This document shows positions 13,430-21,246 of a stretch of DNA of 64,000 nucleotides, piece after piece. The stretch lies in the sequence record MH791398.1; one strand, 5' to 3'. The notes below the pieces were generated by a model that did not search any database, was not told the DNA's origin, and saw nothing but the letters and a program-made list of their open reading frames with translations. The stretch's first letter is position 1; each line of letters begins with the position of its first letter. The position numbers and the translations under genes are program-made.

Positions 13430-14443
13430 TTAAACTTTGTTAGCTTTCAACATAAATTTCTTGACAAGAGCTTCCATCTGCGCTCCACCAGAAGAACTAT
13501 GAGATTTCATAGTATGAACAAGTTCTTTCATAACATCCATATTTTCCGGGGTTTCTGTCTCATAAAACGGAGTAGTTACAGACCAACGTTCTTTAGTACC
13601 AGTACGACCACTGATATTCCATATACCCTTTCTCATCCATGTCATACGAGAGAAGTAAATCACAGAACCGTTACCAATGTCAACTGCGAAATCATCACCG
13701 CCCAAATGTTTTCCTTCAAGTTCTTTTTTGACGAAAAGAACATAATCGGCTTTCTTGAGCGGCTTGACCTTTTTATCACCAGAAAAAGCTTTCTTTAGCT
13801 TGGTTTCTGGGAAAAGGATTTTCGGATCCTTCATAAACTTTTCAGTTTCGGATTGGTTGTAATTGCTTTGGGTCATTTTTACTTTTTTACGGTCAATCAG
13901 AACCTCAGTGAAAACACCCATCTTATCCAACTCAGGTTTATCAATACCTGCACCCAGAGCTTTGGTGATAAACACATGAGCCATTGCATTCAGATCAAAG
14001 AAAACTGTACGGTCTTCCGACGTAAATTTATAATCGACAGAAGAAGTTCCCCAAGTACCAACGGTAATTTTACGTTCAAATGTGAACTTTTTACCGCTCA
14101 TCTTTTGGAAGTAGTCAAGATAAGCCTGAGTATCAAAAAACTTGTCAAACATATGGGTTACGAAGTTAGTTACAACATGTTTCTCTTCTTCCTGTTTCTG
14201 TTTTCGCTGTGCCCATGTAGCTTCTTGGGTTGCAGGAGAACCAGATTTTCTCAGTTCTTCGTAAGCTTGGTTTACTGCCTGCATTTTTTCGGTGGAACCA
14301 CCACGGTCTGGGTGGTTATCCTTTGCTGCCTTGCGATATGCAGCCTTTAGTTGGTCATCAGTAAACTTACCAGTCAAACCAAGAGCCTTCATCGCGACTG
14401 CTTGAGTCATAGATTCAAACAGCTCATTAAACATCTTAGACAT
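13430..14443 (-). CDS. J-domain (DnaJ-type co-chaperone) protein
   Basis: ALGL...LKAAYRKAAKDNHPDRGGSTEKMQAVNQAYEEL with an intact HPD motif. Confidence 0.88.
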   Translation of the reverse strand: MSKMFNELFESMTQAVAMKALGLTGKFTDDQLKAAYRKAAKDNHPDRGGSTEKMQAVNQAYEELRKSGSPATQEATWAQRKQKQEEEKHVVTNFVTHMFDKFFDTQAYLDYFQKMSGKKFTFERKITVGTWGTSSVDYKFTSEDRTVFFDLNAMAHVFITKALGAGIDKPELDKMGVFTEVLIDRKKVKMTQSNYNQSETEKFMKDPKILFPETKLKKAFSGDKKVKPLKKADYVLFVKKELEGKHLGGDDFAVDIGNGSVIYFSRMTWMRKGIWNISGRTGTKERWSVTTPFYETETPENMDVMKELVHTMKSHSSSGGAQMEALVKKFMLKANKV

Positions 14444-15707: not shown

Positions 15708-16265
15708 TTACTTTTGGAATGGGTGTCCTGCACCAATACCGACCGGGTTTTGTTTTGGTAGAATTTCCAAATCATTGACACCAACAACACTCATAGATGA
15801 ATAACTAAACGTTACATTACCTATAAGGGCTGGGTTTCCGTCATCAACATAGGACAATTCTATATCGTCCAATGAACTCGGGAATGGGTCGTGAAACTTG
15901 AAAGTCAATACTATATTCTTTTTTGAGTTATCCAGAATATGAACCAAAATAGATCTAGGTCTAGCACCCGGTAGATGGGCAGTGGAATTGAAAGTTCTAC
16001 TATCAGTAACAGAGATCATCCATTGATACAACTCTTTATAAGATTCGAAATTTTCATCAATCAAAAATCTAATCCTAAATGGTTCGTAAATGATCTTCGA
16101 ACCCGGCATAAGCCCGGACGTCATCTGATTTATCGAAACCCTCGTTATATCCATTTCCATAGTTGGAAGAACAACGGATTGAGCTGATGTTACAAAGTTA
16201 GCGGTTGTGTTTGCGTCTGGGATTTCCAGACGCATGTTTGTTATGTGTGCTTGATTATGTATCAT
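15708..16265 (-). CDS. 3: Tail tube terminator / sheath stabiliser gp3
   Basis: PGSKIIYEPFRIRFLIDENFESYKELYQWM...HILDNS. Confidence 0.9.
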   Translation of the reverse strand: MIHNQAHITNMRLEIPDANTTANFVTSAQSVVLPTMEMDITRVSINQMTSGLMPGSKIIYEPFRIRFLIDENFESYKELYQWMISVTDSRTFNSTAHLPGARPRSILVHILDNSKKNIVLTFKFHDPFPSSLDDIELSYVDDGNPALIGNVTFSYSSMSVVGVNDLEILPKQNPVGIGAGHPFQK

Positions 16266-18124
16266 GTTGACGGTTGAACTCCATATGAATATTGCGGTTG
16301 ATCTGGTCTAAATTCACCAAAGCCAGACGGTAGAACGGAATTCATACTGTTATATGTAGTATTATTTACAGCAGCCATTAAAGCACCTTCTTGTCGTCGT
16401 GCGTCTCGTTCTTCCTTTTCACGTTGTTGTTTAGCTCGGAATTCTTCAACCTCTTGGTTCCTTTTCTCAAGGGTTTTAAATACAGGCTCAGTTTCACCAG
16501 CCTTAATTTCATTCCCTAATTTAGATTCCGGTTGAGCTTCATTAGCATTAGCTTTTCCAAACAATGATCCAGTAAGACTTTCCCAAGCACCCTTAGCAGC
16601 ATCAACACCCTTATCTAACAGCTCGGGATTCTCTTTGGCGAAGTTATACAACTCATAAGCCATCAAGCCAGCACCAACAAAAGGAATTGCTCTACCAGCG
16701 ACACGTACCGCCATACCGGCACCAGTCAATGCGCTTTTTGGTATAAATTTAGAGGCTGATTTTGCAGCATCGGCAGCAACAGACCAACCTTTTTTACCAA
16801 GATCCGCCGCCTTTGACAAAATACCAGCTTTCCCTTTAGGGGTAGGTGTCTTTGTTTTAGGGGTCTCTATTTTTGCTGGTTGTCCGGGTTTAGGTTCCGG
16901 TGTGGGTGTCTTCTTTCCATCGGGTGTTGTAGTTTTTGGAGACTTCTTAGGATCCTTAGACGCATCGTTTGGATTAACTCCGCCAGACGATGGTGTTTGG
17001 GTCTTACTTCCCAACCCCGGTATCTTATCAAACAACCCAGAGAACTTAGCAATTAAACCACCAACAGCAGCAGATAGGGCACCCGCAATCATAGGAGCCA
17101 AACCAAGAACCGCACCAGATAGAACACTGATACCAGAAACAAGGCCACTAAGAACAAACCCAACACCACCAATCAATTTACCGATCAACATGGACATCTG
17201 GATACCTTTAAGAACATCGATTAAGCTTTTATGACGCTTTTCGTTGTTCTCTCGTTCTCTTCCATTTTCTTGTCTTTCTTTCTTTTGTTCTTGGTTATTT
17301 CTATCTGTTTTTACTTTGTCTTCGGGTTTGTTTTGTGGGATCTGCTGGAATCTAGAAGTAGCATCAGCCTTCTTCTCTTCATAAGCCGCATTCGCTTTTG
17401 CATCTAATTTCTTTTCCTTACGTGCGTTATGTGCATCGATAATAGACCCACCAACAAACTTCGTTGCATTAGCGGCCTGATTATAACCGGGAATAGTTGA
17501 TAACAAATCGTTTATGGTTCCAGTAACCATACCGATACCAGCGGACATAGTATGACCAAGTATTTTCGCTGTTGCTGATGTTTCTGATTTCTTCATTCGG
17601 TCAACTATATTAGCTTTTTTTGCTATCTCTCGAACAAATTTACCAGTTTTTTGATTTTCTTCTTTGAAATTTTCCACAAATTCACGACGATCACCAACTT
17701 CGCGTTGTATAAATTCTTTCAAAGTCTCCCTAGTGTCCTCCTGCATAGGTTTGGCAGTTTCCCCCTGTTCTGGGTTCTGACTTTTTACACCTTGGCTATA
17801 ATCCACTAGGGGTTGTTTATTATTTAAAATGTCTTCTAGTTGCTTTCGTCTAGCTGAAACTAATTCGTTTTCAACCTTATTACTACGCTTATTATCCTTT
17901 CTGGCACCTTTTATCTGGTTCGCTAATTTTTCTTGTTCTTGTGCGACTTCCAGACTGGAATCAGAAGTAATATCATAAGACGCGGTAAGGTCTTTTGTTG
18001 AGTTGGACAACTTTTCTGTCTTGTCGTCCAACTTAAGCATCGAATCAGAAACAATATCCATAGCATCAGTGACATCTCGAACCGATTTATCAAGTTCGTT
18101 CTGTTTCTGCTTGTCAATCATCAC
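16262..18124 (-). CDS. 29: Tape-measure / baseplate hub gp29-like protein
   Basis: 620 aa, charged helical regions plus Gly/Ala-rich hydrophobic segments; position between gp26/51 and gp3. Confidence 0.65.
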   Translation of the reverse strand: MMIDKQKQNELDKSVRDVTDAMDIVSDSMLKLDDKTEKLSNSTKDLTASYDITSDSSLEVAQEQEKLANQIKGARKDNKRSNKVENELVSARRKQLEDILNNKQPLVDYSQGVKSQNPEQGETAKPMQEDTRETLKEFIQREVGDRREFVENFKEENQKTGKFVREIAKKANIVDRMKKSETSATAKILGHTMSAGIGMVTGTINDLLSTIPGYNQAANATKFVGGSIIDAHNARKEKKLDAKANAAYEEKKADATSRFQQIPQNKPEDKVKTDRNNQEQKKERQENGRERENNEKRHKSLIDVLKGIQMSMLIGKLIGGVGFVLSGLVSGISVLSGAVLGLAPMIAGALSAAVGGLIAKFSGLFDKIPGLGSKTQTPSSGGVNPNDASKDPKKSPKTTTPDGKKTPTPEPKPGQPAKIETPKTKTPTPKGKAGILSKAADLGKKGWSVAADAAKSASKFIPKSALTGAGMAVRVAGRAIPFVGAGLMAYELYNFAKENPELLDKGVDAAKGAWESLTGSLFGKANANEAQPESKLGNEIKAGETEPVFKTLEKRNQEVEEFRAKQQREKEERDARRQEGALMAAVNNTTYNSMNSVLPSGFGEFRPDQPQYSYGVQPST

Positions 18125-18295
18125 TTAGTCCTTTTCTCTCGCCTGTTCTTTAAGATCGTTTAGGTAGAGGTGAACATAAACACCAAATTCAAAGGGGGTC
18201 ATATCCTCAAGGTCCGAATGGCTCCATCCATCTTTTCTAAGCTTATATACCGTATTAAAATGATCGTATATGGTATGGTTAACAAGCGTTATGCG
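18125..18295 (-). CDS. 51: gp51-like C-terminal extension, probably reached by -1 frameshift from gp26
   Basis: 56 open codons RITLVNH...WSHSDLEDMTPFEFGVYV; the only in-frame ATG lies inside the conserved motif; frame begins at the TTTTTTC heptamer. Confidence 0.7.
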   Translation of the reverse strand, partial: RITLVNHTIYDHFNTVYKLRKDGWSHSDLEDMTPFEFGVYVHLYLNDLKEQAREKD

Positions 18296-19074
18296 AAAAA
18301 ACTTTCTACCCCTTTAAGTGTAACAATTTCTTGGTGTCCACATTTTTTACACTTTACAGGTATATTTAGAGTATGTTGGGGGAGGGATGTTACAAATTTA
18401 CCCATTTTTGTCAAAGCAACTGAATCGGCGTATTCCATAATTTCAGAAATATCCTCATACGGAATATCAACACCAACCTTAACAACCTGATCTCCCATAT
18501 GAACTTCGTCAATACAGCGATTGATTAAGTTAAACAAGTCGGACTCAACTTCTACGTTGAAATATTCAACCTCGCTGATATTAGGATATCTCATATAAAC
18601 TGTCATGTTCTCATTCAGAACAATTTTGTTATCTGGCGCATCAGACAATTTAGCGTTATTCAAGTTTACGTTTACTTTAATATCAGAACCACAACGAACA
18701 ATTTCACCATATTGGTCATATTGAACATTACCATCTTCATCGAGAATTTCGTTGGCGCAAGTAAACATAACCGGGACAGTTGGACTTGCTTTTGATAACT
18801 TATACAAAGCTAGATAAACTGCTTCCAAGTCAAACACAGGTAAAAGGTCTACATCAACATTATCAGTTAGGATACAGTTTTTTACGATTTGAATGATCGC
18901 ATCATCGATTCCAGTATTGGCTTCGTTAGCCAACATCAACAGTTTCATTTCTTTCATCAAAAAAGCACGAACCTTGATCTTCCTACCATCTGATAAAGTC
19001 ACATTGGTCTGTTGTACGTTTTTCTGCATAGCAGCAAGAAGTACACTCTTGTCAATCGTGGTTTTGTTTGTCAT
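18289..19074 (-). CDS. 26: Baseplate hub assembly protein gp26-like
   Basis: KVRAFLMKEMKLL, LPVFDLEAVYL, Cys pairs (TC...RC; CKKCG), ends LKGVESFFA. Confidence 0.82.
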   Translation of the reverse strand: MTNKTTIDKSVLLAAMQKNVQQTNVTLSDGRKIKVRAFLMKEMKLLMLANEANTGIDDAIIQIVKNCILTDNVDVDLLPVFDLEAVYLALYKLSKASPTVPVMFTCANEILDEDGNVQYDQYGEIVRCGSDIKVNVNLNNAKLSDAPDNKIVLNENMTVYMRYPNISEVEYFNVEVESDLFNLINRCIDEVHMGDQVVKVGVDIPYEDISEIMEYADSVALTKMGKFVTSLPQHTLNIPVKCKKCGHQEIVTLKGVESFFA

Positions 19075-19147: not shown

Positions 19148-19270
19148 ATAGTTTCACTTGCAATCAAACTATAAAGTCTCTATAAGTATTTATATAGAAA
19201 ATCTATAATTAGAAAGTGTGTGAGCGAAGCGAACAGGCGGCTACGCCGTCTCACTACGTTCGAGATCTAT
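19148..19270 (+). repeat. Origin/ssi-like element, copy 1
   Basis: Inverted near-identical copy at 61359-61479; 51-bp core 19220-19270 is identical. Confidence 0.85.
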
Positions 19271-19277
19271 AGATATG

Positions 19278-19302
19278 AAAAAGCCACCCCGTAGGATGGC
19301 TT
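19278..19302 (-). terminator. Terminator after gp54; near-identical to the one after inh (61848-61872)
   Basis: AAAAAGCCACCC-(C/A)GTAGGA-TGGCT. Confidence 0.7.
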
Positions 19303-19306
19303 AGTA

Positions 19307-20248
19307 TTAACGAATGGCTTTCACAACGCCTGTAGTACGTCTTATGATACTCTCTATAGAGTCGATGGTGTTCTCTTCACCCTTAGTAGGAACATGCACT
19401 GTGGTTGATACAGCGAATGTGACGGTAAAGGTTGCTACCTGAGAATTGTTCTCAAAATCTAGTTGAACTTCACCTACCTCTATGGGAAAGCACCCTGTAT
19501 TATGTACAGTGGATTGCTTAACTCCATGACGGTCTAACGTGATGACGTCAATATCCTTTGCATACGTATTATAAAATCCAAATTGTCCATTTCTTGGGTT
19601 GACAATTGTATTCTGCCATGTTAGCATCAAAGAACGTTCCTCGTAAGAAGGGGAACAGTAAAACGTCATACTCATGGTTCCGTAGTTTCTACCTCTAACT
19701 TCGTGTCTAGGTAGTTTGTCTGTACGGTTGATTGTCGTTTCCAAAGTAGAACTAGGAAGACCGACACTCTTTACCATTAATGCTAGATCTCTGTTTACAT
19801 CGTAATCAGTTCCCAAAAATCCATCAAGGATCTCTCCTGCTCCCGGTATGATCCGGATCAAGGACGGGTCCCAAGCACCAAAAATCTTCTTCATGCTAGG
19901 CGTGAGGATTTTGTGTGCTTGTCCCAAAGCAATGTCCTGAACTCTATGCCAAGCATAACTTGTACCAGAGAAAAGACTATCATTGACGTCCATCCCGCTA
20001 CTTGAATCAGGAAATATTGGTAAATCCCTATCAAAAACACCATCACTGAATATAGAGGTTCGGAAATCTCCGAACCTTACAATAAACATGTTTGGTCTAG
20101 CCAGATCAGTATTTTCAACTTTCCGCATAAACCTAGTTAGGTCGGGGATCTCGCTTGCATCCCCACCATCGTTTAATAAATCTTCACCAAACCCGATAGT
20201 ACTATCTATCATACTATCTATGGTTGGAATAGGTGGTATTAAGTTCAT
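19307..20248 (-). CDS. 54: Baseplate tail tube initiator gp54
   Basis: DLARPNMFIVRF, LMVKSVGLPSS, PIEVGEVQLDFENNSQVATFTVTF. Confidence 0.88.
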   Translation of the reverse strand: MNLIPPIPTIDSMIDSTIGFGEDLLNDGGDASEIPDLTRFMRKVENTDLARPNMFIVRFGDFRTSIFSDGVFDRDLPIFPDSSSGMDVNDSLFSGTSYAWHRVQDIALGQAHKILTPSMKKIFGAWDPSLIRIIPGAGEILDGFLGTDYDVNRDLALMVKSVGLPSSTLETTINRTDKLPRHEVRGRNYGTMSMTFYCSPSYEERSLMLTWQNTIVNPRNGQFGFYNTYAKDIDVITLDRHGVKQSTVHNTGCFPIEVGEVQLDFENNSQVATFTVTFAVSTTVHVPTKGEENTIDSIESIIRRTTGVVKAIR

Positions 20249-21246
20249 TAGTATGATCTCCAAACGGAATTCGTATTATAGGTCTTCGGAGGAACACCAG
20301 ATACAAACCGTTGAGTCGGTAGATTAATGACAGAACTCCAATCCTGCGGTTTAATCTCCATTAATGGACCCTTAATATGACCCGGCAAATACGCTTTGAT
20401 CATATGGTCTGCACCTCTCATTCCCTTAACCTTACCCCAGTTGATATTTAGGGATGTACGGTTGGTAATCCTCTCTGTGGTTGCATGTTTCAGCAACTCT
20501 TCCATAAATTCTTTACGGGCTTTGATCGGGATATAGTGAAGGTTGAGACCCAACATCAAACCTTTGTGTTTTGCACTTAGGCCAAGATATACGATCAGGG
20601 GGAATTTATCCCAGTATGGTAGTGTTGCCTTATGTTTTGCGTCATATGCGAAAGTATACAATCGCCCAGCAATTGGTCTTGTTACTTGGTGACCACGAAC
20701 GTTTTTCTTTATGAAATTGTTAAACCATTCCGTTGACTTCTTCTGAGACTTTACAGGCTCTTTTTCGTGTTGTCTTACTTTATTTCTAAAGTCAGCCAAC
20801 AACATCTGATATTTTTCGGCTTTAGATAGTTTTCTTCCGCTTATTTGCGCATCTTTTAACTTCTTAGCCAGTAGAATATCTTGCTTGAATCTTCTGAATG
20901 CCCGCTCCGTGGTTTCTTTATTAAGTCCACGTCCTTCAATATAATTTTTTAGAGTAATACTACTCTTTTCTTTTTGTGTCAAATAATCAACACCAAGCTC
21001 AATCCATTGTTGTTTATTCTTGTTTGGGTTTACCAGAGAATAATAAGTCTTTATTTCTTCTCTGTGTCTGCGCATAGCTCTACTGAATGTTTCATAATTC
21101 AACCCTTTTTCCTCTGCATATTTCTTTGCAGTAAGACTTGGGTTCTTTTTCTTGGCGTTCATATAATCAACACCAACATCAATCCATTGTTTTCTATTGC
21201 GTTTTTCTGTTGTGGACTCTGCACGTTCAGTTATTTCGAATATCAT
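20248..21246 (-). CDS. 2: DNA end protector gp2
   Basis: GRLYTFAYDAKHKATLPYWDKFPLI...GLNLHYIP. Confidence 0.95.
   Translation of the reverse strand: MIFEITERAESTTEKRNRKQWIDVGVDYMNAKKKNPSLTAKKYAEEKGLNYETFSRAMRRHREEIKTYYSLVNPNKNKQQWIELGVDYLTQKEKSSITLKNYIEGRGLNKETTERAFRRFKQDILLAKKLKDAQISGRKLSKAEKYQMLLADFRNKVRQHEKEPVKSQKKSTEWFNNFIKKNVRGHQVTRPIAGRLYTFAYDAKHKATLPYWDKFPLIVYLGLSAKHKGLMLGLNLHYIPIKARKEFMEELLKHATTERITNRTSLNINWGKVKGMRGADHMIKAYLPGHIKGPLMEIKPQDWSSVINLPTQRFVSGVPPKTYNTNSVWRSY

What the first reader, a model, noticed from the sequence alone, without database searches (positions are those of the whole stretch)
18125..18313. Programmed -1 frameshift joining gp26 to a start-less gp51-like ORF upstream of the tape-measure gene
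Seen: gp26 ends ...GTA GAA AGT TTT TTC GCA TAA. The heptamer T TTT TTC (18301-18295) fits the X XXY YYZ rule, and the -1 frame continues for 56 codons (RITLVNHTIYDHFNTVYKLRKDGWSHSDLEDMTPFEFGVYVHLYLNDLKEQAREKD) to a stop 1 nt before the tape-measure start. That frame has no ATG/GTG/TTG before the Met inside the conserved LEDMTPFE motif. An SD-like AGGGGT lies 6 nt upstream of the slip site. Known: lambda G/GT and P2 E/E' tail chaperones use such frameshifts just before the tape measure, whereas T4 has separate genes 26 and 51. Inference: two products, 261 aa and about 316 aa, act as a G/GT-like tail chaperone pair in a T4-type phage.
Basis: partly seen in the sequence, partly recalled or inferred. 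Interest (0 to 1): 0.76.

Follow-up and report, generated by a model that had tools for sequence, protein, structure and literature searches.

The report
Recoding site in T4-like tail chaperone
A T4-like Aeromonas phage almost certainly makes a short and a long tail-assembly chaperone from one gene by slipping back one base at a run of T's, a real and deeply conserved signal that is missing from database annotations but was already described for T4-like phages in 2022.

Summary
gp26 (19074..18289, minus strand, 261 aa) ends two codons after an in-phase T TTT TTC. The -1 frame then runs 56 codons with no usable start and stops at the start of the next gene.

The window is Aeromonas phage Asswx_1/CC2-type (Straboviridae), and no GenBank record annotates the recoding. 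I read 100 loci where a gp51-C-like ORF follows gp26 in the -1 frame (Aeromonas, Vibrio, Citrobacter, Pseudomonas and Acidovorax phages, cyanophages, metagenomes). Of these, 99 keep T TTT TTN in phase and one keeps an in-phase T TTT tetramer. Eight loci lack that ORF, including T4-type phages, and none has the motif.

In 71 distinct cyanophage genes, only these two Phe codons are fixed at the nucleotide level. The -1 ORF evolves as coding sequence from its first codon. T4-type gp51 is a gp26 paralogue plus this same C-terminal module, so it matches the predicted 316-aa product.

The mechanism (ribosomal slip versus polymerase slippage) is not settled by sequence, and calling the 620-aa neighbour a tape measure is an inference.

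The idea is published: Vladimirov, Gautam & Davidson, Virology 2022, known to me only through citing papers. Verdict: real, well supported, already known.

The parts
18289..19074 (-). gp26, the short chaperone form (TAC-N); 261 aa, stop included in the coordinates
   Evidence: ORF listed. PF12322 T4_baseplate E = 1.1e-54, covering profile positions 6-219 of 219. phrog_150 'baseplate hub' E = 6.7e-59. AlphaFold2 model with mean pLDDT 95.
18295..18301 (-). Slippery site T TTT TTC, in phase with gp26 (X XXY YYZ)
   Evidence: Read. Present in phase as T TTT TTN in 99 of 100 loci that have the -1 ORF, and in 0 of 8 loci that lack it. Its two Phe codons are the only conserved codons fixed at 100% in 71 distinct genes. 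The motif class is among the most efficient -1 shifters in E. coli (PMC4066793).
18125..18295 (-). -1 frame extension: 56 sense codons plus TAA; a gp51 C-terminal-like module with no start codon of its own
   Evidence: phrog_634 'baseplate hub assembly catalyst' E = 2.2e-12, and the C-terminal end of phrog_150. tblastn finds it in 38 phage records. hhalign to T4-type gp51 residues 204-244, E = 8.4e-5. Coding-type substitution pattern. Homologous ORFs carry PF28602 Gp51_C in precomputed hits.
18308..18313 (-). Purine-rich Shine-Dalgarno-like stretch upstream of the slip site; a possible stimulator, status uncertain
   Evidence: The Gly codon here is GGR in 79% of genes, against 30% and 14% at two other conserved Gly columns. 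It overlaps conserved Glu/Lys/Arg-Gly codons that are equally purine-rich in T4-type gp26, which has no shift site.
16262..18124 (-). 620-aa gene immediately downstream; probable tape measure, the positional counterpart of T4 gp29
   Evidence: phrog_11300, function unknown, E = 1e-261. No similarity to T4-type gp29 by BLASTP and none to PDB sequences. Syntenic counterparts weakly hit tape-measure families: ValKK3 phrog_58 E = 1.6e-6, pf16 phrog_4070 E = 0.0085. It lies between the chaperone gene and gp3 in every locus.
15708..16265 (-). gp3-like tail tube terminator (context)
   Evidence: PF06841 E = 1.2e-6. Annotated 'tail completion and sheath stabilizer' in the identical record.
19307..20263 (-). 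gp54-like baseplate-tail tube initiator, the upstream neighbour (context)
   Evidence: phrog_45 'tail tube' E = 1.1e-46. Annotated.
19281..19302 (-). Terminator-like hairpin between gp54 and gp26, suggesting that gp26 opens a new transcription unit
   Evidence: 9-pair stem with 5 G-C pairs, followed by a T-run.

Best explanation
Gene 26 of this T4-like Aeromonas phage is a tail/hub assembly chaperone gene that is decoded in two ways.

Most ribosomes read it to its stop and make the 261-aa short form, the counterpart of T4 gp26 (TAC-N). At U UUU UUC, two codons before that stop, a minority of ribosomes slip back one base with both Phe-tRNAs re-pairing. They then read 56 further codons in the -1 frame. 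The result is a 316-aa long form whose added C-terminal module is the one found at the C-terminus of T4 gp51 (TAC-NC).

The long form ends exactly at the start of the next gene, the probable tape measure. By analogy with lambda G/GT, both forms would coat the tape measure through the shared part, and the added module would recruit tube or hub subunits. T4 itself reaches the same outcome with two diverged paralogous genes, 26 and 51.

Shown here: the anatomy, its conservation at nucleotide level, coding selection on the -1 ORF, and the gp26/gp51 paralogy.
Inferred: that the shift is ribosomal, how efficient it is, and the chaperone mechanism.

My confidence that recoding at this T-run yields the two forms is about 0.9. 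The 0.65 given below applies to the shift being specifically ribosomal.
For: 1. Anatomy confirmed in the window.

2. Conservation of the site. In 100 loci with a gp51-C-like -1 ORF after gp26, 99 have in-phase T TTT TTN and one has an in-phase T TTT tetramer. The 100 loci are 17 phage or metagenome loci read individually, 80 IMG/VR loci chosen by gp26 alone, and 3 more variants. In 8 loci without that ORF, none has the motif, and T4-type phages encode the same Phe-Phe as TTC TTT.

3. Nucleotide-level constraint. Of 68 conserved degenerate codon columns in 71 distinct genes, only the two Phe codons of the site are fixed (71/71 each). Eight other conserved Phe columns mix TTT and TTC. The preceding codon always ends in T although its amino acid varies.

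4. 'FL' endings among 154 family representatives turned out to be T TTT TTA, as the model predicts.

5. The -1 ORF is coding from codon 1. Codon-position entropy is 0.62 / 0.38 / 1.08, and Aeromonas pairs show 25 synonymous against 10-11 non-synonymous codon changes. No start codon is conserved.

6. The 0-frame stop (TAA, TAG or TGA) follows one codon after the heptamer in all 80 survey loci.

7. T4-type gp51 is PF12322 over residues 1-201 (E = 5e-56) plus a tail matching phrog_634 and the end of phrog_150, while T4-type gp26 stops at profile position 235 of 282. The -1 peptide profile aligns to gp51 residues 204-244.

8. Each phage record has a single gp26-family locus detectable by tblastn, so no separate long gene was detected in these phages at that sensitivity.

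9. U_UU.U_UU.Y is among the most efficient -1 motifs in E. coli and is used by IS elements (PMC4066793).

10. gp26 and gp51 are listed as hub assembly chaperones, gp51 is absent from the virion, and gp29 is the tape measure (PMC3004832).

11. The best PDB match of gp26 residues 1-100 is the HK97 tail assembly chaperone. Three of 83 relatives weakly hit PF10109 Phage_TAC_7.

12. Citing papers report poly-T slip signals in the TAC-N genes of T4-like phages (PMC12846349).
Against: - No product has been observed; everything here is comparative.
- No downstream stimulatory RNA structure was found. The window fold has z = 0.22, the alignment fold shows nothing conserved, and there is no Rfam match.
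- The upstream SD-like stretch cannot be separated from protein-coding constraint.
- The signal is always a homopolymeric T-run, so polymerase slippage would give the same protein and explains the same conservation.
- One lineage (L110) has only five T's, with a tetramer rather than a heptamer.
[quoted passage not shown] I could not read the paper to see whether that refers only to T4's two genes.
- Some lineages have an ATG 2-3 codons into the -1 ORF and annotate it as a separate gene.
Confidence: 0.65

Rival explanations
1. Transcriptional slippage. RNA polymerase stutters on the T-run and produces a minority of length-variant mRNAs in which the gp26 frame and the downstream frame are continuous. 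Standard translation of those mRNAs gives the same long product.
For: - The conserved element is always a homopolymeric run of six T's, occasionally seven.
- No RNA structure of the kind that usually accompanies ribosomal -1 shifting was found.
- Runs of seven U are avoided in E. coli genes in all frames, which the authors attribute partly to transcriptional slippage (PMC4066793).
- TTTTTTC is under-represented in this window: 18 observed against 29.9 expected.
- The title of Vladimirov et al. [quoted passage not shown]
Against: - Six T's, and five in L110, is short for programmed polymerase slippage. From general knowledge, known cases use about 8-9 or more.
- Selection has not lengthened the run, although Phe-Phe could be encoded so as to give seven T's. 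80 of 80 survey loci keep ...TTC.
- The site is a textbook in-phase heptamer of a class measured as efficient for ribosomal shifting.
- An SD-like stretch sits upstream.
- PRFect's summary suggests the 'other mechanism' is T4's pair of separate genes.
Confidence: 0.22
2. The -1 ORF is an independent small gene, a 'short gp51' of about 25-57 aa. It would be translated by its own initiation, or by termination-reinitiation after gp26, rather than being fused to gp26.
For: - Databases annotate it this way in several phages: ValKK3, S-RIM44, PX29, phiAS5, and a 26-aa stub in phage 65.
- Some lineages have ATG or TTG within 1-3 codons of the slip site.
- Sullivan et al. 2010 treated the short cyanophage gp51 as a gene (PMC3037559).
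Against: - The first possible start ranges from -16 to +31 codons and is not conserved.
- In the window it would give only a 25-aa product that lacks the conserved N-terminal half.
- Codons upstream of any start are under coding selection, with amino-acid conservation of 0.72-1.00 in columns 1-7.
- This model does not explain why T TTT TTN is fixed at the nucleotide level only where the ORF follows in the -1 frame.
- It also does not explain why the natural single-ORF homologue, T4 gp51, carries this module fused to a gp26-like body.
Confidence: 0.08
3. Artefact or decay. Either a homopolymer sequencing error has split one continuous gene, or the 164-nt stretch is a non-coding spacer or a dead remnant.
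For: Homopolymer runs are error-prone in some sequencing chemistries, and the stretch is unannotated in every close record.
Against: - The same arrangement recurs in more than 100 independent isolates and metagenome assemblies from different platforms, hosts and families.
- The 0-frame stop is kept at the same place with all three stop codons.
- The -1 ORF shows purifying selection.
- No terminator or promoter lies in the gap.
Confidence: 0.01

Closest known systems
T4 gp26 and gp51 (hub assembly chaperones; TAC-N and TAC-NC of T4-like phages, Vladimirov, Gautam & Davidson, Virology 2022)
   Same: Same protein family: PF12322 for the body, and phrog_634 / Gp51_C for the added module. Same outcome: a short form, and a long form that is the short form plus a C-terminal module. 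According to a citing paper, poly-T slip signals in the TAC-N genes of T4-like phages are already described.
   Different: T4 and other Tevenvirinae encode the two forms as two diverged, divergently transcribed genes, have no slippery site, and place gene 26 far from gene 29. Here there is one gene plus recoding, immediately before the probable tape measure. I could not read the 2022 paper, so I do not know whether it names this Aeromonas group or gp26/gp51.
Lambda G/GT tail assembly chaperones (Levin et al. 1993; Xu et al. 2004, 2013, 2014)
   Same: [quoted passage not shown] The lambda features are summarised in PMC5009743.
   Different: The slip motif differs. gp26 is more than twice as long and carries an extra four-Cys, zinc-ribbon-like domain. 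There is no significant sequence match to Pfam chaperone families for the window protein. The upstream neighbour is gp54, not the major tube protein.
HK97 tail assembly chaperone (PDB 2ob9)
   Same: It is the best PDB match of gp26 residues 1-100: prob 0.89, TM 0.46-0.47 over the whole 104-residue chain. It is also the only PDB hit of the full model with notable probability.
   Different: E = 0.087 and TM below 0.5, so this is suggestive rather than significant. Only the first 100 of the 261 residues are involved.
P2 E/E' and Mu gp41/42 chaperones (Pfam PF10109 Phage_TAC_7)
   Same: Myovirus chaperones made by a -1 shift before the tape measure gene. Three of 83 gp26 relatives give weak hits, best E = 0.0036.
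   Different: The window protein itself gives no hit, and all hits are far below family thresholds.
dnaX and IS-element -1 frameshift signals in bacteria
   Same: An in-phase heptamer of a class measured as efficient (U_UU.U_UU.Y, also found in IS elements) and an upstream SD-like stretch.
   Different: No downstream hairpin or pseudoknot was detected. The SD-like stretch is confounded with conserved codons.

Membership tests
T4 gp26/gp51 family (Pfam PF12322 T4_baseplate, plus Gp51_C) | Full-length match to PF12322 above the gathering score | tested here: met
   185.9 bits against a cut-off of 24.5, profile positions 6-219 of 219.
T4 gp26/gp51 family (Pfam PF12322 T4_baseplate, plus Gp51_C) | Extension homologous to the C-terminal module of gp51 | tested here: met
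   phrog_634 E = 2.2e-12. hhalign to T4-type gp51 residues 204-244, E = 8.4e-5, probability 60%. PF28602 Gp51_C is recorded on the homologous ORFs of L101 and L105. The local Pfam copy gave no hit for the window piece.
T4 gp26/gp51 family (Pfam PF12322 T4_baseplate, plus Gp51_C) | Required for hub/tail assembly but absent from the virion | not testable with these tools
   Known for T4 gp51 (PMC3004832). No data exist for this phage.
Frameshifted tail assembly chaperone pair (lambda G/GT type) | Second ORF in the -1 frame, overlapping the 3' end of the first and lacking its own conserved start | tested here: met
Frameshifted tail assembly chaperone pair (lambda G/GT type) | Slippery sequence conserved among relatives at the nucleotide level | tested here: met
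   99 of 100 loci, with the codons fixed 71/71.
Frameshifted tail assembly chaperone pair (lambda G/GT type) | Located immediately upstream of the tape measure gene | tested here: inconclusive
   The 620-aa neighbour has the size and position of a tape measure, and its counterparts weakly hit tape-measure families. It has no detectable similarity to T4 gp29 or to PDB sequences.
Frameshifted tail assembly chaperone pair (lambda G/GT type) | Chaperone fold | tested here: inconclusive
   The top PDB hit of the N-terminal domain is the HK97 chaperone 2ob9: prob 0.89, E = 0.087, TM 0.47. The whole-protein search gave nothing significant.
Frameshifted tail assembly chaperone pair (lambda G/GT type) | Sequence membership in a curated tail-chaperone family (Pfam Phage_TAC_*) | tested here: not met
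   No hit for the window protein at E up to 1. Only 3 of 83 relatives hit PF10109, best E = 0.0036.
Frameshifted tail assembly chaperone pair (lambda G/GT type) | Two products actually made, with the long form in the minority | not testable with these tools
   This needs expression data.
Bacterial -1 ribosomal frameshift signal (dnaX / IS type) | In-phase X XXY YYZ heptamer of proven efficiency | tested here: met
   and PMC4066793.
Bacterial -1 ribosomal frameshift signal (dnaX / IS type) | Downstream hairpin or pseudoknot | tested here: not met
   z = 0.22. The consensus fold is -0.23 kcal/mol with only 4 pairs. No Rfam match.
Bacterial -1 ribosomal frameshift signal (dnaX / IS type) | Upstream Shine-Dalgarno-like stimulator | tested here: inconclusive
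   Enrichment is clear and the Gly codon is biased toward GGR.

The most novel reading that the evidence does not exclude
The long form may be made by RNA-polymerase slippage on a T-run of only six (five in one lineage) rather than by ribosomal slippage. Alternatively it may be made by a ribosomal shift that needs no RNA structure and relies only on the heptamer, an upstream SD-like stretch and the stop codon one codon downstream. Either way, the same unconventional signal would operate across most non-Tevenvirinae T4-like phages, including the abundant marine cyanophages.
Probability: 0.2. Interest if true: 0.5.

Novelty: already known. Interest (0 to 1): 0.3.

Why it matters
This is mainly an annotation fix. 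None of the 21 close or related Aeromonas phage records annotates the long product. The 164-nt stretch is left empty or given a 26-aa stub.

It also explains two old puzzles. Sullivan et al. 2010 noted that cyanophage and vibriophage 'gp51' is only about 20% of the T4 length, and that gp51 is 'missing only in Aeh1'. Aeh1 does carry the module, in the -1 frame and without a start codon.

Biologically, it places the T4-like phages within the general rule that long-tailed phages make a short and a long tail chaperone in a fixed ratio. It also shows T4 itself as the exception, having resolved the recoding into two paralogous genes. That general point appears to have been published in 2022. The added value here is a quantified nucleotide-level survey and the still-open question of mechanism.

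Tried and rejected
**Searches that led nowhere**
- BLASTP of T4-type gp51 against either piece of the window was not significant; profile methods were needed.
- The search for related loci with the divergent gp26 alignment failed for lack of conserved stretches. The ACP17 query found only itself.
- The word-indexed protein search returned only 12 close relatives, so the exhaustive HMMER search was used instead.
- PDB sequence searches for gp26 and the 620-aa protein found nothing.
- The 620-aa protein shows no similarity to T4-type gp29, and NCBIfam gave only a coiled-coil-type SMC hit.
- No downstream RNA structure, Rfam family, terminator or promoter was found in the gap.

**Literature**
- Six searches on gp26, gp51 and frameshift found no relevant paper.
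- The 2022 Virology paper surfaced only through the PRFect reference list. It is not held in the library.
- Two citing papers carried it only in their reference lists, and one cited it only in passing.

**Hypotheses rejected**
- Sequencing error and non-coding spacer.
- A conserved independent start.
- The one 'short' -1 ORF in the survey (L072) is a contig end, not a truncation.

The SD result rests on it and should be treated as provisional.
- I recognised a late-promoter-like octamer upstream of gp26 by eye from remembered knowledge, not with a tool.
- I built no sequence joining the two frames. The pieces were always searched apart.
Full report
**What is there**

The window is 100% identical over this region to Aeromonas phages Asswx_1 and Aszh-1, and 97-99.7% identical to CC2, AS-zj, AS-sw and others (Straboviridae, Emmerichvirinae, Ceceduovirus). 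All genes below are on the minus strand.

- gp54 lies at 20263..19307. A terminator-like hairpin follows at 19302-19281.
- gp26 lies at 19074..18289 (261 aa). It matches PF12322 over its full length, 185.9 bits against a cut-off of 24.5.
- A 164-nt stretch follows that no record annotates.
- A 620-aa gene lies at 18124..16262, then gp3 and dNMP kinase.

gp26 ends Ser-Phe-Phe-Ala-stop, with T TTT TTC at 18301-18295 in phase. The -1 frame is open from 18313 to 18128 and stops at 18127-18125, directly before the next gene's start. Its first ATG/GTG/TTG is 31 codons after the slip site.

**Identity of the -1 piece**

I searched the 56-62-aa piece apart from gp26. It hits phrog_634 'baseplate hub assembly catalyst' (gp51) with E = 2.2e-12, and weakly hits the last 53 positions of the gp26-family profile phrog_150.

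tblastn finds the piece in 38 phage records. In each locus examined, the homology starts about 6 nt before the gp26 stop.

**Comparative test of the slip site**

I read the junction in phages that are 70% identical or much less:
- phage 65, Aswh_1 and avDM6 (Ishigurovirus);
- phiAS5, Aeh1, PX29 and Ahp1;
- Citrobacter Ci1;
- Synechococcus S-H38 and S-RIM44 (Kyanoviridae);
- Vibrio ValKK3 (Schizotequatrovirus);
- Pseudomonas pf16;
- Acidovorax ACP17.

All of them have T TTT TTC (pf16 has T TTT TTT), then one codon, a 0-frame stop, and a 55-69-codon -1 ORF that ends at or overlaps the start of the next large gene.

Eighty IMG/VR loci chosen only by gp26 similarity (53-95% identity to S-RIM44) all show the same layout, using TAA, TAG and TGA as the stop. 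In 69 of 76 evaluable loci, the -1 stop overlaps the next long ORF's start by 1, 4 or 8 nt.

The exhaustive HMMER search found 3,258 family clusters. Of the best 154 representatives, 102 end Phe-Phe plus one residue, 12 end Phe-Phe, and about two dozen end Phe-Leu plus one residue. I predicted that the Leu would be TTA or TTG, and the DNA of two such cases showed T TTT TTA followed by a gp51-C-like -1 ORF. Other variants fit as well:
- T TTT TTT followed directly by a stop (L104);
- T TTT TTC with a later 0-frame stop (L105);
- one lineage with only five T's, giving an in-phase tetramer (L110).

In the opposite direction, eight gp26 genes have no -1 gp51-C ORF downstream: the T4-type phages ECML-134 and CGG4-1, and metagenomic L102, L103, L106, L107, L108 and L109. 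None has a slippery site. The T4-type genes encode the same Phe-Phe as TTC TTT.

**Nucleotide-level constraint**

In 71 distinct cyanophage-type gp26 genes, 68 conserved columns have degenerate codons. Only the two Phe codons of the site are invariant (TTT 71/71, TTC 71/71). Eight other conserved Phe columns have major-codon shares of 0.61-0.93. The codon before the site always ends in T, although it encodes Asn, Ser, Asp or Ala.

**The -1 ORF is coding from its first codon**

Codon-position entropies in the -1 frame are 0.62, 0.38 and 1.08. Columns 1-7, which lie upstream of any start in most loci, are 72-100% conserved. Aeromonas pairs differ by 25 synonymous against 10-11 non-synonymous codon changes. 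The first possible start wanders from -16 to +31 codons. This rules out an artefact and makes independent initiation unlikely.

**Relation to T4**

In Tevenvirinae, gene 26 is followed by gene 25 on one strand, and genes 51-27-28-29 run divergently.

T4-type gp51 (249 aa) matches PF12322 over residues 1-201 (E = 5e-56) and phrog_150 over positions 13-280 of 282. T4-type gp26 (208 aa) covers only positions 14-235. Residues 147-246 of gp51 match phrog_634. The profile of the -1 peptides aligns to gp51 residues 204-244 (E = 8.4e-5).

So gp51 is a gp26 paralogue plus the module that this phage encodes in the -1 frame. It is the natural single-ORF equivalent of the predicted 316-aa product. tblastn finds only one gp26-family locus per record, so no separate long gene was detected in these phages at that sensitivity.

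**Function**

Leiman et al. 2010 list gp26 and gp51 as hub assembly chaperones, with gp51 absent from the particle and gp29 as the tape measure (PMC3004832).

The AlphaFold2 model of gp26 is confident (mean pLDDT 95). Its only close structural relatives are gp26/gp51 family members in the viral library.

Residues 1-100 form a beta-hairpin plus three helices. Modelled alone (pLDDT 83.5), their best match among 350,542 PDB chains is the HK97 tail assembly chaperone 2ob9 (prob 0.89, E = 0.087, TM 0.47), followed by 3fgx (TM 0.55). Three of 83 relatives weakly hit PF10109, the P2 E / Mu gp41 chaperone family. These results are suggestive and not significant.

The 620-aa neighbour has no detectable similarity to T4 gp29. 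It has the right size and position, and its counterparts in ValKK3 and pf16 weakly hit tape-measure families. 'Tape measure' is therefore an inference.

**Mechanism**

U_UU.U_UU.Y is among the most efficient -1 motifs measured in E. coli and occurs in IS elements (PMC4066793).

No downstream RNA structure is present or conserved. An SD-like stretch is enriched 6-10 nt upstream: 62% of loci are at or below -5 kcal/mol, against 4.3% background. The Gly codon there is GGR in 79% of genes, against 30% and 14% at other conserved Gly columns. However, the same codons are purine-rich in T4-type gp26, and the anti-SD string in my script came from memory.

Because the signal is a homopolymer, polymerase slippage would yield the same protein and explains the same conservation. 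Sequence alone cannot separate the two. I put about 0.9 on recoding at this site, and split that roughly 0.65 ribosomal to 0.22 transcriptional.

**Novelty**

My first six literature searches found nothing. Sullivan et al. 2010 had noticed the short cyanophage and vibriophage gp51, and its 'absence' from Aeh1, without explaining either.

The PRFect preprint cites Vladimirov, Gautam & Davidson (Virology 2022). It summarises that some T4-like phages carry a short gene and a longer fusion gene instead of frameshifting. A 2025 paper cites the same work for poly-T slip signals in the TAC-N genes of T4-like phages. I could not obtain the paper itself. On this evidence the central idea is published.

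What remains useful here is the missing annotation, the quantified survey, and the open mechanism question.

Noticed in passing
L007 (Aeromonas phage Aeh1, NC_005260) 2501-2674: Sullivan et al. 2010 state that gp51 is missing only in Aeh1 among 26 T4-like genomes. The gp51-C module is present there, in the -1 frame after gp26 with the same heptamer, but without a start codon and unannotated.
   Followed up: yes
window 18289-19074 (gp26 residues 106, 128, 242, 245): Four Cys residues are invariant or nearly so across the family, and weak zinc-ribbon Pfam hits recur. This suggests a metal-binding domain that lambda-type tail chaperones lack.
   Followed up: partly
window 19187-19194, minus strand: An A/T octamer resembling the T4 late-promoter consensus lies about 110 nt upstream of the gp26 start, after the terminator-like hairpin at 19302-19281. 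I recognised it by eye from remembered knowledge and did not test it with a tool.
   Followed up: no
window 20248-21246, minus strand: The gp2 DNA-end-protector homologue (332 aa) carries an extra N-terminal HTH-type DNA-binding module: phrog_32288 at residues 1-69, ahead of phrog_429 at residues 137-332.
   Followed up: no
window 13430-14443, minus strand: A 337-aa protein with an N-terminal DnaJ (J) domain, E = 7e-9, conserved in this phage group as phrog_13942.
   Followed up: no
L012 2459-3082 (T4-type gp26): T4-type gp26 gives a weak hit to the gp28 'baseplate hub distal subunit' family (phrog_1140, E = 0.001, residues 32-141). This hints at a remote relation between gp26/gp51 and gp28.
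   Followed up: no
L109 (GCA_053365915.1, 1.1-Mb contig) 1201-1932: A gp26-family gene sits in a megabase-sized contig of a genome assembly, next to a CapR-domain protein. It has no slip site and no -1 module. It may be a prophage or a tail-like particle locus.
   Followed up: no
window, whole: TTTTTTC is under-represented in the window: 18 matches against 29.9 +/- 5.5 in shuffles. This is consistent with general avoidance of slippery T-runs.
   Followed up: no
window 15708-16265 (gp3), minus strand: gp3 has an in-phase A AAC CCG near its 3' end, with the -1 frame open for 273 codons. This is simply the frame of the next gene (dNMP kinase), which has its own ATG after a gap, and the motif is a poor shifter. 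I judged it coincidental.
   Followed up: partly
BFVD hits to the gp26 model: Much larger proteins (380-690 aa) from jumbo and other myoviruses (phiRSL1, PaBG, phiEaH2, RP12) match the gp26 fold with E of 1e-4 to 1e-7. The gp26-like chaperone body may therefore be widespread beyond T4-like phages.
   Followed up: no
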